From Ministeria vibrans ATCC 50519 (lineage: Eukaryota > Protista > Filasterea), in contig CALSCP010001546.1 in the NCBI GenBank assembly GCA_943704425.1, positions 30,206 to 77,322 of the forward strand: DNA of 47,117 bases, in the 5' to 3' direction. Under the pieces are notes generated by a model. It ran no database searches. It saw only the letters and a list, made by a program, of their open reading frames with translations, and was not told the origin of the DNA. A program made the position numbers and the translations under genes. Of this stretch, positions 1,856 through 8,805 are shown piece by piece. Every line of letters starts with the position of its first letter. Position 1 is the first letter of the stretch.

Positions 1856-4800
1856 TCACGTCCAGCTAAAGGGACGCCCATCCTCCGAGACAGTCCCTGA
1901 GCCCATCTTGCACGGCGGTGACTCCTTGCCCGCCTCCAGCTTGTCCCACTTGATCCCTTTGAAGAAGGGGTGTCCAACTACATCCATCTCATCGGGGCCA
2001 TTGCCCAGTCGCACACGAGGATCGCGCTCAAGAAGAGTCTACACACGCAAAAAAAAGAAAAAAAAATTATAATAAGCAATGTATTCAGTTCGTTCGTGGT
2101 TTTTATATATGGTTACCATCAGGAACATTTTGGCGGGGCGCGACAGTGAGTGTGGAAAGTAAATGGCCGCATTGCAAATCTAAAAATATACCCACAAATC
2201 AACACAAGCAACTCACACACTAAAACCTCTTACCTGATCTTTGATGTCAGCAATGTTGTCAGCAAAGAAGGGGGGACGACCAATCATGAGGGAGTACATG
2301 GCAACGCCCAGGCCCCACCAGTCAACAAGCTTGCCGTAGGGCTGCTTGAGGACCATCTCGGGGGCCATGTAGCCAGGAGTGCCGGCGTAGTCGGTGGCGC
2401 TGGCGTCTGCTTCGGAGCACGCCAGGCCAAAATCGGCAATCTTGATGTTGCCGGCGGTGTCAAAGAGAAAGTTCTTAAGCGACATGTCGCGGTAGATGAG
2501 GTCGTGGCGGTGCAGGAAGCGCAGGGCGGCGCTGAGTTGCGCTGAGTAAAACTTGCCGCGCTTCTCGCTGATGGCCTCCTTGGGCGAGCTGGGCATAGCG
2601 ATGGAGCCACCGCCAAGATACTCCATAACCAGGTAGTGTCGGTTGGGCGTCTCAAACGCGCCGTAGAGCGTCACAATGTTGGGATGGCGCAGGTTCATCA
2701 TGGCGCGCTCGACGGCAATCTCCTCGGCAAGGTCCGCGGCTGCCTGTCCGCCGTTCTTCTCGAGCGCCTTGACGGCGCGCAGCTGCGACTTGTTGTCGCG
2801 CGCCAGCACGACCGTGCCAAACGCACCCTGGCCCAGCTGTCGAACGTACTGGAAGCTCTGCGATCCCATGCAGTCGCCGCCTTGCTGGGCAAGCTGCTGG
2901 GCGCTCTCAATGGCTGCCGAGAAGTCCGCGTCGTAGTCCTCGTAGAGCGGGATGGTCCCAAAGCGTAGCACCACGACCGTAATGTTGTCCTCGCTGCCGT
3001 ACTCGTACGCAAGATCACGCAGTTTGGCGGCCGCCTGTACCGCATCCGGGTTGAAGCGCACAATGCGCACGGCCATCTCGTACGTCATAACATCCCACAG
3101 ACCGTCGCATGCGAGAATGAGAAACTCGTCGGTGGGAACTTGCACATCTGTGCGCGCCACTGTCGGCGCCGGAATCACAAACGGGTGCATGTACATGTCA
3201 CCGAGGCAGCGCGTAGTCGCAAGAATGCCATTGACACGCAAATCATCACTGACATACCCATTGAGCATAATGATGCGCTGGCGTTCCTTGTCCTGGTCAC
3301 AGCCATGCTTGCACGTCAGCACCTCAACCTCCCCACCGCGCGACATGACCACTTCCGTGTCGCCCACGTTGGCCGCATACAGCCAGGTCTCGCCCGTCTT
3401 CGGATCCCGGTTGGCGTACACCACAGCGGCCGTCGTGCCCTCCTTGAGTCCAGTCAGGCCCTAGCAATGTACAAGTAAGTGAGAAGGCAAGACGTGACAG
3501 TGGCACATCATACAAGAGAGCGATGTGTCGAGTAAAAGGAGCTCCGCAGTGCACGGTCCACTGCACCCTGTTCGTCCTTGAGCGCCGCCTGAAAACGGTT
3601 GGGATACAAATCACGAGCGCGACGAGACACCTTCAAAAAAAAAATCATATCAATGTTTGCGTATAATTGAAGATTTTTTTTAAATACGTTGTAGCCACTG
3701 TGACCGTCAAAGACACCCAAGAGAATTTCATCGGGGTTTCCTTTGAAGTCAATCTCCAACATGGACGCATCCTCCTGCTGCGGACGACGACCCAACACTT
3801 CCGCATGGCCGTACGTCCAAGCACCCTAAAGACAAACACCAACGGGTCAGCGTATGCATAATGCATCGCATTGCAACACATACACGACAGGCAAAACCGC
3901 CCTTGTCCATCTTGACGGAGCGTGGACCGACGCGCGAGTGCACAACGACAGTGACGCCCAGGCTGTGTGGCACGCCAATGAGCGCCAGCTGCTGCAGCGC
4001 CGCACAGCCCGACAGGTCCGCAGAGGCAAAGGCCTTCTCGGCATTCATGGCGTAGTTTCCGCTCAGGTCAAGAATTTGCATGTTCTTCAGCTTCTCAAGA
4101 GGCTTTGGAACGTGAACCAGACGATTCCCCGCCAAATCAATGTGCTTGATTGAGTCGGGCAGTGCAGGTAGATCCTTCAGTCGGTTTGACGCGCACATCA
4201 GATACTATGAAATGTTTCAGATTGTTAGTGCGCGATTCAAAATTCTGTTGGTATTGCATTTGTTACCTCGAGCTTCTTGAGGTCTTTGATTTCCTTTGGC
4301 AAAGCTGCGATTGAGTTTCCGCTAAGATAGAGAACCTCAATGGAGCTCATTTTGCTGATGAACTTTGAGATTTCAGTGATTCCATTGTTTGACAGACCAA
4401 GAACTACAAAGAACAAAAAAGTTAATGAAGAGATTAAGGACAAAAATAATATAATTATAATTATTAAGGATTGATCCACGAGTTGTCCTGCACTAATCCT
4501 CACGTTGCATTCTCTCAATCCCTTTGCTGTTTTTTTTTTCGCTCTCTCTCTCTATAACCCTTTTTCTTTCTCCCTCTCTCTCGTACCTCGCATGCGAGTG
4601 TAGCTGCAGATGCGGTCAATGACACCGTTGCCCAGTGCATTCTCGGCCAAGTGCATCTCTTCGACAATGTTGTACTCTTCGACCTCTGGTGGGAATGGAA
4701 GTTTCTCCAAACGGTTGTGCGACAGGTTGATTTTGCGCTATGTAAGTAAAGGAAGGGAGAGTGAGTAAGTGGCAATCAGAGCACAGACGTGAATAAGATG

Positions 4801-7800: not shown

Positions 7801-8805
7801 TCCAGTCTCGCCTTGAATCACACAATTGGTTCTCAGGTGAGTGTGTGTGTGTGTATGTTTGTCTTTGTGTTCTTATGCGCACCTCTGCTGCAGTGTAGCC
7901 AAGTTGCATGAGAAGTCTCGTTTGGGTTTGCAGGGGAAACTCACGACGGTGCAACTACACACATATATTTACAAAAAGGTCAGCTTATGCTTTCTTTTGC
8001 GTATCACGCATAATATCACAGACTACACAGACACACACACACACAAACCTCACAAACCACACAAACCACAGAGAGAGAGAGAGAGAGACCATACAGACCA
8101 CACAGACCATACAGACCACACAGACACACATTCGTACCTTGCGCTCCGTTTGCTGTCGCATGCGCTCCACAATCCAGGGAGATCGACTGCCAATGAGCTA
8201 AGAGTGCATTAAAGCAGACAAGAACATTATGATATTATTATGACTGCGTCTCTCACTCCTTCCCAGCCGCATGAATACACTCTCCGATGCATCAAACCCC
8301 CACTTATTAGACCCAATGTGGACCAGGGGGTCCGTACGAACATCGTGTGGACGTGGAGAGGGCACAGGAAACGCTTGGCGTGGGGAAATCCGAAAATAGG
8401 CAACGGACGAGATCCGCGGTGGGAAAACACGCGAACGCCGCTTGGAACTCAGCCCAATTAGGTACAGACAGCAAGGATGGCTCCCATGTAGGACACACAC
8501 GGGCATGGCGCAGGCGATATTAGCGTCTGGGGACACACCAGCGCGAAATGGTGACGAACACCGCCACTCCAACTTTGAGCCTTTGAACCACACGCAAAAC
8601 CAAACAGAGACGCTTACCCCGGACGCTGTCGCGGTGAGCTCCTCCGCCGTAGTCGCCATAGAGCAGTGGATGACATGGTGTGATTTCAGGTTTGCCTATC
8701 ACATCACACACAACACAAAGTGATGACGTCGATTCTTTTTTTTTTTGTTTTTCTCATGTTTCTTTTTAGTACCTCGTAAACACGGATCCATCCGTCGTCC
8801 CCCAT
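1856..8805 (-). CDS. PHLPP-like RA-PH-LRR-PP2C phosphatase fused to a C-terminal AGC-like Ser/Thr kinase (~20 exons)
   Basis: ATG 8805 MGDDGWIRVYE; EFPLQTQTRLLMQLGY (PHLPP/Cyr1 RA-region motif); PH domain (~7180-7720, ending YTFNADTDKLRTSWIMRLEK); many LRR exons (~3960-7170); PP2C motifs RRPQQEDA, VFDGHSG, ANVGD, RCLGD, ACDGLWD, GSEDNIT; kinase GQGAFG, AVK, YRD, DFG, APE, DWWGLG, HPFFKGIKW; stop TGA 1858-1856. The RA-region exons are less certain. Confidence 0.85.
4802..5037. repeat. Intronic tandem repeat, ~81-82 bp unit x ~2.9
   Basis: acacgcaaaacaaaaaatgaacaccactagag...aatcggaatctcac starts at 4802, 4883 and 4965. Confidence 0.92.
6170..6443. repeat. Intronic compound repeat: ctctatcactttgtatctttctcc units, then (CT)n(CA)n
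   Basis: Direct. Confidence 0.92.

What the first reader, a model, noticed from the sequence alone, without database searches (positions are those of the whole stretch)
1856..8805. PHLPP-type phosphatase (RA-PH-LRR-PP2C) fused in-frame to an AGC-like kinase
Seen: PP2C and kinase lie in one uninterrupted exon (~2234-3462), so the fusion is not a gene-model artefact. LRR, PH and RA-like exons lie upstream with no gap. Known: animal PHLPP is RA-PH-LRR-PP2C and is linked to dephosphorylation of AGC kinases (Akt, PKC, S6K); fungal Cyr1 uses RA-LRR-PP2C with an adenylate cyclase at the C-terminus. Inference: this is a third use of the same chassis, with a kinase as effector. It may be a self-contained Ras/lipid-gated kinase-phosphatase switch and a Rosetta-stone link between PHLPP and AGC kinases. 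I do not recall this architecture being described.
Basis: partly seen in the sequence, partly recalled or inferred. Interest (0 to 1): 0.88.

Follow-up and report, generated by a model that had tools for sequence, protein, structure and literature searches.

The report
Pre-animal PHLPP phosphatase fused to kinase
This is a real 23-exon gene for a PHLPP-type phosphatase (RA-PH-LRR-PP2C) fused in frame to an AGC-type kinase, but the same design is already in the databases for Capsaspora and was described in print in 2025, so this is a further member and not a new architecture.

Summary
On the minus strand, exon 3460-2234 is one open frame holding the C-terminal 158 positions of a PP2C domain (E 2.8e-41) followed by a protein kinase domain (E 9e-55). 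I built a 23-exon model, 8805 to 1856, with GT-AG at all 22 introns. It gives 1334 residues with no internal stop.

The model is colinear end to end with Capsaspora owczarzaki XP_004365182.2/KJE88716.1 (41% identity). That protein carries RA_3, PH, LRR, PP2C and Pkinase domains. The two are reciprocal best hits.

The PP2C keeps all its metal-binding motifs. The kinase groups with the three other PHLPP-attached kinases (100/100), inside the AGC kinases beside PKN/PKC.

The novelty claim fails. PNAS 2025 (PMC12002173) and BioEssays 2026 (PMC13358185) already report that PHLPP of unicellular holozoans keeps an active-type PP2C and carries a C-terminal AGC kinase that animals lost.

What I add:
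- The family's kinase lacks the catalytic-loop Lys. The window has YRDMSLKN and its relatives YRD[LI]ALHN.
- It lacks the activation-loop Thr.
- It lacks a canonical hydrophobic motif and ends in a conserved F-x-G-W instead.

These features argue against a simple switch in which the PP2C resets its own kinase. There is no RNA evidence for this genome.

The parts
8773..8805 (-). Exon 1 (aa 1-11): start ATG at 8805-8803 and the start of the RA domain (GWIRVYE)
   Evidence: Matches GSIRVYK / GFIRVYK at the N-termini of P0271 and P0273. Donor is GTACTA.
8618..8695 (-). Exon 2 (aa 12-37), RA domain
   Evidence: Colinear with Capsaspora residues 20-45. TAG acceptor, GTAAGC donor.
8138..8197 (-). Exon 3 (aa 38-57), RA domain; preceded by a 420-nt intron
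7883..7954 (-). Exon 4 (aa 58-81), RA domain core (LGYTAAE)
   Evidence: tblastn with P0273 residues 54-84. The only Pfam RA_3 candidate in the genome covers 7859-8023.
7677..7811 (-). Exon 5 (aa 82-126): end of the RA domain (GKEDHTYLVQYV) and start of the PH domain
   Evidence: tblastn with P0273 residues 80-98; alignment.
7481..7571 (-). Exon 6 (aa 127-156), PH domain
7319..7398 (-). Exon 7 (aa 157-183), PH domain
7097..7256 (-). Exon 8 (aa 184-236): PH C-terminal helix (TSWIMRLEKV) and the first LRR
   Evidence: tblastn with P0273 residues 178-228, 39% identity.
6889..6999 (-). Exon 9 (aa 237-273), LRR
   Evidence: tblastn with P0121 and P0273.
6691..6839 (-). Exon 10 (aa 274-323), LRR
   Evidence: LRR pattern hits.
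6459..6617 (-). Exon 11 (aa 324-376), LRR
   Evidence: Pfam LRR_8/LRR_4 (protein 10).
5715..5849 (-). Exon 12 (aa 377-421), LRR; preceded by a 609-nt intron full of (GT)n and (GA)n repeats
5560..5637 (-). Exon 13 (aa 422-447), LRR
5286..5501 (-). Exon 14 (aa 448-519), LRR
   Evidence: Pfam LRR_8, E 9.8e-14. 63% identity to P0273 residues 454-513.
5099..5209 (-). Exon 15 (aa 520-556), LRR
   Evidence: 52% identity to P0121 residues 504-536.
4587..4737 (-). Exon 16 (aa 557-606), LRR; preceded by a 361-nt intron with a ~100-nt tandem repeat
4267..4403 (-). Exon 17 (aa 607-652), LRR
3884..4204 (-). Exon 18 (aa 653-759): last LRRs and the LRR-PP2C junction
   Evidence: Pfam LRR_8; colinear with P0121 residues 634-724.
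3688..3825 (-). Exon 19 (aa 760-805): PP2C N-terminus with RRPQQED (3789-3769) and FDGHSG (3711-3694)
   Evidence: Aligns to PP2C structure 2ISN. Motif coordinates.
3514..3630 (-). Exon 20 (aa 806-844), PP2C
2234..3460 (-). Exon 21 (aa 845-1253) holds three parts in one open exon. (1) PP2C C-terminal part, with NVGDTE at 3370-3353, CDGLWD at 3109-3092 and GSEDN at 2998-2984. (2) A 32-aa acidic/Gln-rich linker at 2956-2861. (3) The kinase from the G-loop to past APE, with GQGAFG at 2833-2816, AVKAL at 2776-2762, YRDMSLKN at 2494-2471, DFG at 2434-2426 and TDYAGTPGYMAPE at 2395-2357.
   Evidence: Pfam PP2C and Pkinase in one frame. 51% identity in a single stretch to Capsaspora residues 816-1222. 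PDB alignments. Coordinates.
2117..2179 (-). Exon 22 (aa 1254-1274), kinase C-lobe
1856..2038 (-). Exon 23 (aa 1275-1334 plus stop 1858-1856): end of the kinase (RDPRVRLG, HPFFKGIKW) and a short tail ending PFSWT
   Evidence: No Pkinase_C hit (protein 3).

Best explanation
Window 8805-1856 (minus strand) is one intact protein-coding gene of a unicellular relative of animals. It is the orthologue of the Capsaspora owczarzaki 'PHLPP with kinase' protein. Its 1334 residues run as follows: a PHLPP-type RA domain, a divergent PH domain, about 20 leucine-rich repeats, a PP2C phosphatase with all metal-binding motifs, a 32-residue acidic linker, an AGC-type kinase, and a short tail.

Shown here: the architecture, the orthology, the intact catalytic motifs of the PP2C, and the membership of the kinase in one clade of PHLPP-attached AGC kinases.

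Inferred mechanism:
- RA and PH bring the protein to a membrane (a Ras-family GTPase and/or lipid).
- The LRR solenoid packs on the PP2C as in other LRR-PP2C proteins.
- The kinase is flexibly tethered, and both enzymes act in trans on nearby substrates.
- Control is by location and by the LRR-PP2C body, not by the usual AGC phosphorylation sites. The activation-loop Thr is Asp here (Ala, Glu or Gln/Ile in relatives). The tail ends in a non-phosphorylatable F-x-G-W that probably fills the hydrophobic-motif pocket permanently, as the FxxF end does in PKA.
- The catalytic loop lacks the Lys two residues after the catalytic Asp and has Lys (His in relatives) four residues after it. Catalysis, if kept, would then use a shifted basic residue, as tyrosine kinases do.
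For: - One-frame PP2C plus kinase.
- 23-exon GT-AG model without stops.
- End-to-end colinearity with P0271 (41%) and P0273 (43%), and per-domain identity of 51-53% in PP2C and 48-49% in the kinase.
- Capsaspora domains RA_3, PH, LRR, PP2C and Pkinase.
- Reciprocal best hits.
- P0273 is encoded by one intronless 4139-nt Logan contig ending in an A-run. That looks like a single fused transcript in a relative.
- PP2C motifs align to active PP2Cs.
- Kinase tree: the four PHLPP-kinases form one clade at 100/100, inside AGC beside PKN/PKC at 97/88.
- PP2C tree: window, Capsaspora and P0273 group at 97/87. Together with Cyr1 and Corallochytrium they group at 84/79. Other PP2C-kinase fusions lie elsewhere.
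- Closest solved kinases are Akt2, Akt1, SGK1, PKC eta and PKN1.
- K at D+2 in 424 of 440 catalytic loops among the proteins fetched, against A or S in this family.
- Published description of the family, with flexible tethering of the kinase in AlphaFold2 PAE plots (PMC12002173).
Against:
- The PH domain has no Pfam support exon by exon and only 24-26% identity to relatives.
- RA_3 is below Pfam's cut-off.
- No animal PHLPP sequence was retrieved, so placement on the PHLPP side and not the Cyr1 side of the duplication rests on the paper. In my tree the split between them is weak (91/41).
- All steps of the mechanism are inferred from sequence.
- Loss of the catalytic-loop Lys could mean weak or no kinase activity.
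Confidence: 0.85

Rival explanations
1. The kinase domain is a pseudokinase or a very weak kinase. In this reading it serves as a docking or allosteric module for the PP2C or for AGC-kinase partners, and does not phosphorylate substrates.
For: The catalytic-loop Lys (D+2) is Ser here and Ala in Capsaspora, P0273 and Corallochytrium, while 424 of 440 loops in the fetched kinases have Lys. The Glu at D+4 that binds substrate Arg in AGC kinases is Lys or His. Corallochytrium has DLG in place of DFG.
Against: The G-loop, the VAIK Lys, the alpha-C Glu, the catalytic Asp, the Asn at D+5, the DFG Asp and APE are kept in all four proteins across deep holozoan splits. Tyrosine kinases work with a basic residue at D+4 in place of D+2 (established knowledge).
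Confidence: 0.25
2. It is a self-contained switch in which the PP2C removes activating phosphates from its own kinase (activation loop or hydrophobic motif), gated by Ras or lipid.
For: Both enzymes sit on one chain with a flexible 32-residue linker. The window's tail ends W-T, so a Thr sits where the hydrophobic-motif acceptor would be. A Thr directly precedes the Asp at the Akt T308/T309 position.
Against: The canonical activation-loop Thr is Asp, Ala, Glu or Gln in the four proteins. The residue after the tail Trp is Thr, Ala, His or Leu, so no acceptor is conserved. Human PHLPP2 shows no activity on Akt sites (PMC12002173).
Confidence: 0.15
3. Gene-model artefact or dead gene. In this reading two neighbouring genes (RA-PH-LRR-PP2C start, and kinase) or a pseudogene are read as one.
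For: No RNA data for this genome. Three introns are unusually long (361-609 nt) and rich in repeats.
Against: The PP2C end and the kinase share one exon without a stop. All 22 introns are GT-AG and all phases fit. Three other species encode the same fused chain, one of them on an intronless contig.
Confidence: 0.03

Closest known systems
Capsaspora owczarzaki KJE88716.1 / XP_004365182.2 ('AGC protein kinase' / 'protein kinase C delta-PA'), the PHLPP homologue with a C-terminal AGC kinase shown in PMC12002173 Fig. 6
   Same: Same order of RA_3, PH, LRR, PP2C and kinase. Similar length (1301/1314 against 1334 aa). Colinear over 1289 columns at 41% identity. Same PP2C metal motifs, the same loss of the catalytic-loop Lys, and an aromatic C-terminal end. 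Reciprocal best hits.
   Different: Catalytic loop is YRDMSLKN here against YRDLALHN. Activation-loop position is Asp against Ala. The tail is F-S-W-T against F-T-G-W-A. The window has a 7-residue insertion in the RA domain and a weaker PH domain.
P0273 (Logan contig from SRR19044633, organism not named) and Corallochytrium limacisporum Clim_evm27s15 (P0161)
   Same: P0273 has the full RA-PH-LRR-PP2C-kinase order and 43% identity. Corallochytrium has LRR-PP2C-kinase at 29% identity. The kinases of all four form one clade at 100/100.
   Different: Corallochytrium has no Pfam PH or RA hit and has large insertions in its PP2C. P0273 is much closer to Capsaspora (64%) than to the window.
Animal PHLPP1/PHLPP2
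   Same: RA-PH-LRR-PP2C body. Pfam names the RA model after PHLPP. Same gene family according to PMC12002173.
   Different: Animal PHLPP has no kinase domain and has a degenerate PP2C active site. It is a pseudophosphatase with no activity on Akt (PMC12002173). The window keeps all metal motifs. No animal PHLPP was retrieved here, so I made no direct comparison.
Fungal Cyr1 adenylate cyclase (RA-LRR-PP2C-AC), e.g. P0412 from Septoria and the Cyr1-like P0409
   Same: RA plus LRR plus PP2C chassis. The PP2C falls in the same 84/79 group in my tree.
   Different: The effector is a class III cyclase and there is no PH domain. PMC12002173 describes the Cyr1 PP2C as lacking catalytic residues. No cyclase lies on the window's contig or on any contig with a PP2C hit.
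AGC kinases Akt, SGK, PKN and PKC
   Same: Best solved matches (E about 6e-48). AGC-like YRD catalytic loop, GTPxYxAPE, the DWW motif, and HPFF after the kinase core.
   Different: No Lys at D+2, no activation-loop Thr, no turn motif, no FxxF[ST][YF] and no Pkinase_C hit.
Other PP2C-kinase fusions (Cafeteria cNMP-PP2C-kinase P0291; P0015; P0296)
   Same: PP2C and Pkinase on one chain.
   Different: Different domain order and partners, and no LRR. Their PP2Cs group apart from the window's at 99/96, so they are independent fusions.

Membership tests
PHLPP family, kinase-bearing holozoan form | N-terminal PHLPP-type RA domain (Pfam RA_3) | tested here: met
   The window aligns over the RA_3-positive residues of Capsaspora (10-85, E 3e-10) at 35-40% identity. 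The only RA_3 candidate in the 29.7 Mb assembly lies at window 7859-8023(-). It scores 22.2 bits, below the 27-bit cut-off, because the domain is split over five exons.
PHLPP family, kinase-bearing holozoan form | PH domain between RA and LRR | tested here: inconclusive
   No Pfam hit on single exons. The region is colinear with the PH-positive region of P0121 (108-184) at 24-26% identity. The Trp of the C-terminal helix is present, but the conserved Trp/Arg of the first strands is not. The joined protein was not scanned.
PHLPP family, kinase-bearing holozoan form | Long LRR array directly before the PP2C | tested here: met
   Pfam LRR_8/LRR_4 on several exons. 18 clear pattern hits, about 20 repeats in all, between aa 212 and 735.
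PHLPP family, kinase-bearing holozoan form | PP2C of the RA-LRR-PP2C (PHLPP/Cyr1) group | tested here: met
   PP2C tree: window with Capsaspora and P0273 at 97/87, and with Cyr1 and Corallochytrium at 84/79.
PHLPP family, kinase-bearing holozoan form | Falls on the PHLPP side of the PHLPP/Cyr1 duplication, together with animal PHLPP | not tested
   No animal PHLPP sequence came back from the searches. This rests on orthology to the Capsaspora protein, which PMC12002173 places in PHLPP.
PHLPP family, kinase-bearing holozoan form | Intact PP2C metal-binding and phosphate-binding motifs (kept in unicellular holozoans, lost in animals) | tested here: met
   RRPQQED, FDGHSG, NVGDTE, CDGLWD and GSEDN are all present. 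They align to active PP2Cs.
PHLPP family, kinase-bearing holozoan form | C-terminal AGC kinase on the same chain | tested here: met
   Same exon and frame. Clade with the other PHLPP-kinases at 100/100.
AGC protein kinases | Kinase core most similar to AGC members | tested here: met
   Top PDB hits are Akt2/Akt1, SGK1, PKC and PKN. Nested in AGC at 97/88, apart from CAMK and Aurora.
AGC protein kinases | Catalytic loop [HY]RD-x-K-x-x-N | tested here: not met
   YRDMSLKN: Ser at D+2 and Lys at D+4.
AGC protein kinases | Activation-loop Thr (PDK1 site) | tested here: not met
   Asp aligns with Akt2 T309. Relatives have Ala, Glu or Gln/Ile.
AGC protein kinases | C-terminal extension with turn motif and hydrophobic motif F-x-x-F-[ST]-[YF] | tested here: not met
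   No Pkinase_C hit on exon 23. The 29-residue tail ends PFSWT, and relatives end F-x-G-W plus 1-3 residues.
Cyr1-type adenylate cyclase | Class III cyclase domain after the PP2C | tested here: not met
   Cyclase hits lie only on contigs C1633, C636 and C1606, none of which has a PP2C hit. The PP2C part of a Cyr1-like query hits the window gene itself.

The most novel reading that the evidence does not exclude
The PHLPP-attached kinases may form a distinct and so far uncharacterised AGC subfamily. Over hundreds of millions of years it has replaced the catalytic-loop Lys (a basic residue is shifted to D+4). It has dropped both regulatory phosphosites. It has fixed a C-terminal F-x-G-W plug. On this reading it is a permanently 'primed' kinase whose output is set by the neighbouring active PP2C and by RA/PH-driven location, possibly with altered substrate or phospho-acceptor preference. 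The two papers I read do not mention these features.
Probability: 0.3. Interest if true: 0.5.

Novelty: new member of a known kind. Interest (0 to 1): 0.3.

Why it matters
The gene confirms, in one more genome, that the pre-animal form of PHLPP was a bifunctional enzyme with an active-type PP2C and an AGC kinase. This bears on the current debate over whether PHLPP ever acted on AGC kinases. The instance itself adds little, because the architecture is published. The conserved oddities of the kinase give concrete and cheap biochemical tests of what the ancestral protein did. These are the missing catalytic-loop Lys, the missing activation-loop Thr, and the F-x-G-W end.

Tried and rejected
- **Earlier notes of this scan.** None near this place or by words.
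- **My first choice of start codon.** I first took ATG 8659. I rejected it once the N-termini of the relatives showed that exon 1 starts at 8805 and that 8659 is an internal Met of exon 2.
- **An open frame at ~8440-8310** that looked RA-like by eye. I rejected it because the relatives leave no room for it.
- **The search for animal PHLPP** with the LRR-PP2C part of P0121. It returned only LRR-PP2C and Cyr1-type proteins.
- **A Cyr1-type gene in the same assembly.** None was found. The assembly has 2860 contigs, so absence is not shown.
- **Joined 23-exon protein.** It was built only inside scripts from window.fa, for translation, local alignment and trees. Those searches were done exon by exon.
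- **Not run.** No structure or complex prediction was run, because the tools return no contacts and the published AlphaFold2 models already cover the family.
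Full report
**Observation.** The feature lies on the minus strand. A stop-free frame at 3460-2216 (415 aa) holds Pfam PP2C at residues 5-160 (profile positions 98-255 of 255, E 2.8e-41). It also holds Pkinase at residues 204-405 (positions 2-204 of 263, E 9.3e-55). The frame is cut by a GTAAGA donor at 2233, so the exon is 3460-2234. Exons upstream give LRR_8/LRR_4 hits.

**Gene model.** I read the minus strand and mapped three full-length relatives on it with tblastn. 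From this I built a 23-exon model from ATG 8805 to stop 1858-1856.
- All 22 introns are GT-AG, mostly GTA donors and TAG acceptors.
- Most introns are 49-105 nt. Two are 183 nt, and three are long at 361, 420 and 609 nt. Two of the long ones (361 and 609 nt) are full of repeats.
- The joined frame is 1334 codons without an internal stop.
- The upstream neighbour on the same strand is a separate PAP2-family gene at about 9299-9909.

The joined protein was made only inside scripts from window.fa and used for local alignment and trees. It was not sent to any search or fold tool. Those searches were done exon by exon.

**Relatives.** A search of 1.84 billion cluster representatives with the PP2C-kinase exon gave one protein that matches in a single stretch over both domains. 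It is P0121, 1301 aa, 51% identity, query 3-408 to residues 816-1222.
- P0121 is Capsaspora owczarzaki KJE88716.1, 'AGC protein kinase'. Its cluster mate is XP_004365182.2.
- Pfam finds in it RA_3 ('PHLPP protein RA domain') at 10-85, PH at 108-184, many LRRs, PP2C at 732-972 and Pkinase at 1025-1265.
- A second search found P0273 (1322 aa, same domains, 66% identity to Capsaspora). It also found Corallochytrium limacisporum Clim_evm27s15 (1489 aa, LRR-PP2C-kinase).
- P0273 is encoded by one intronless 4139-nt Logan contig of run SRR19044633 that ends in an A-run. That looks like a single fused mRNA.
- The window model aligns end to end with Capsaspora (41%), P0273 (43%) and Corallochytrium (29%).
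- Against Capsaspora and P0273, identity by domain is RA 35-40%, PH 24-26%, LRR 40-42%, PP2C 51-53% and kinase 48-49%.
- The Capsaspora protein's best match in the window's own 29.7 Mb assembly is this locus (E 4.8e-122). The next PP2C match scores E 6e-20.
- Pfam RA_3 run on the whole assembly gives a single candidate, at window 7859-8023(-), below the cut-off.

**Phosphatase.** All the motifs that hold the two metals and the phosphate in PP2C enzymes are present: RRPQQED, FDGHSG, NVGDTE, CDGLWD and GSEDN. They align to active PP2Cs with solved structures. In a PP2C tree the window groups with Capsaspora and P0273 (97/87). That set groups with two Cyr1-type proteins and Corallochytrium (84/79). 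Other PP2C-kinase fusions, from Cafeteria and two metagenomic proteins, sit elsewhere at 99/96, so they are independent inventions. No animal PHLPP was retrieved, so I could not test the PHLPP-versus-Cyr1 side directly.

**Kinase.** The closest solved kinases are Akt2, Akt1, SGK1, PKC eta and PKN1. In a tree of 46 kinase domains the four PHLPP-attached kinases form one clade (100/100). That clade is nested among AGC kinases beside PKN/PKC (97/88) and lies apart from the CAMK and Aurora kinases. This points to one origin of the fusion.

The G-loop, VAIK Lys, alpha-C Glu, catalytic Asp, Asn at D+5, DFG and APE are kept. Three things are not:
- The catalytic loop is YRDMSLKN. Relatives have YRDLALHN or YRDIALHN. 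The Lys at D+2 is missing and a Lys or His sits at D+4.
- The residue aligned with Akt2 T309 is Asp. Capsaspora has Ala, P0273 has Glu and Corallochytrium has Gln/Ile.
- The tail is 29 residues with no Pkinase_C hit. It ends PFSWT, and the relatives end F-x-G-W plus one to three residues.

From general knowledge, tyrosine kinases work with a basic residue at D+4, and PKA ends in a non-phosphorylated FxxF that fills the same pocket. The kinase may therefore be active and permanently primed. A weak kinase or a pseudokinase is a fair rival.

[quoted passage not shown] One copy gained PH and a kinase domain (PHLPP) and the other gained a cyclase (Cyr1). It also states the following:
- PHLPP homologues of unicellular holozoans keep active-site residues and in some cases carry a C-terminal kinase.
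- That kinase is of the AGC family, appears flexibly attached in AlphaFold2 PAE plots, and was lost in the metazoan ancestor.
- Its Fig. 6 shows Capsaspora and Corallochytrium.

PMC13358185 (2026) repeats this. Neither text mentions the catalytic loop or a pseudokinase. PMC12002173 also reports that human PHLPP2 has no detectable activity on Akt.

**Mechanism.** The architecture, the orthology and the motif content are shown here. The rest is inferred, as follows:
- RA and PH recruit the protein to a membrane.
- The LRR-PP2C forms a rigid body with a tethered kinase.
- Both enzymes act in trans.
- Control is by location and not by the usual AGC phosphosites.

The window has a Thr just before the Asp of the activation loop and a Thr as its last residue. 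But no acceptor is conserved in the family.

**Verdict.** The architecture and its relation to PHLPP and Cyr1 are right. The claim of an undescribed design is wrong. No copy of this protein is in the protein collection searched, so it is an unannotated further member of a published kind. Interest is modest. The conserved deviations of the kinase are the part worth a bench test.

**Limits.**
- No RNA data for this genome.
- The PH and RA calls rest on homology and not on Pfam thresholds.
- The position of the window inside the kinase clade is unsure because of long branches.

Noticed in passing
window 5850-6458 and 4738-5098 (introns 11 and 15 of the gene): The two longest internal introns are filled with repeats. 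The first has long (GT)n and (GA)n runs plus a degenerate ~40-nt repeat. The second has a ~100-nt unit repeated about three times in tandem (seen).
   Followed up: no
window 1-180: A long trinucleotide (TAT/ATA-type) run sits at the start of the window. It reads as poly-Tyr, poly-Ile or poly-Leu in the three minus frames.
   Followed up: no
window 9299-9909 (-): Separate upstream gene of the PAP2 phosphatase superfamily (Pfam PAP2, E 5e-10), in at least two exons.
   Followed up: partly
window 10524-13763 (+): An open frame of 1079 aa, rich in Ser, Ala and Thr, with no Pfam match.
   Followed up: partly
window 16832-18769 (+), 29941-31674 (-), 44642-45736 (-): Neighbouring genes are an LRR protein of 645 aa, a sulfatase, and a protein of tandem EGF repeats. 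The last fits a relative of animals.
   Followed up: partly
G000 contigs C1633, C636, C1606: Class III cyclase domains occur only on contigs without a PP2C hit. A Cyr1-like query finds its PP2C match in the window gene itself. So no Cyr1-type RA-LRR-PP2C-cyclase gene is visible in this fragmented assembly, although the literature reports both paralogues in unicellular holozoans.
   Followed up: partly
P0291, P0015, P0296-P0299, P0302, P0305 (not in the window): Other eukaryotes, such as Cafeteria, and metagenomic proteins carry PP2C and kinase on one chain in other orders and without LRR. Their PP2Cs group apart, so they are independent fusions.
   Followed up: partly
window 8674-8676 (-), inside exon 2: An out-of-frame ATG with a short open frame overlaps exon 2. 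I saw it while choosing the start codon, and it has no known meaning.
   Followed up: no
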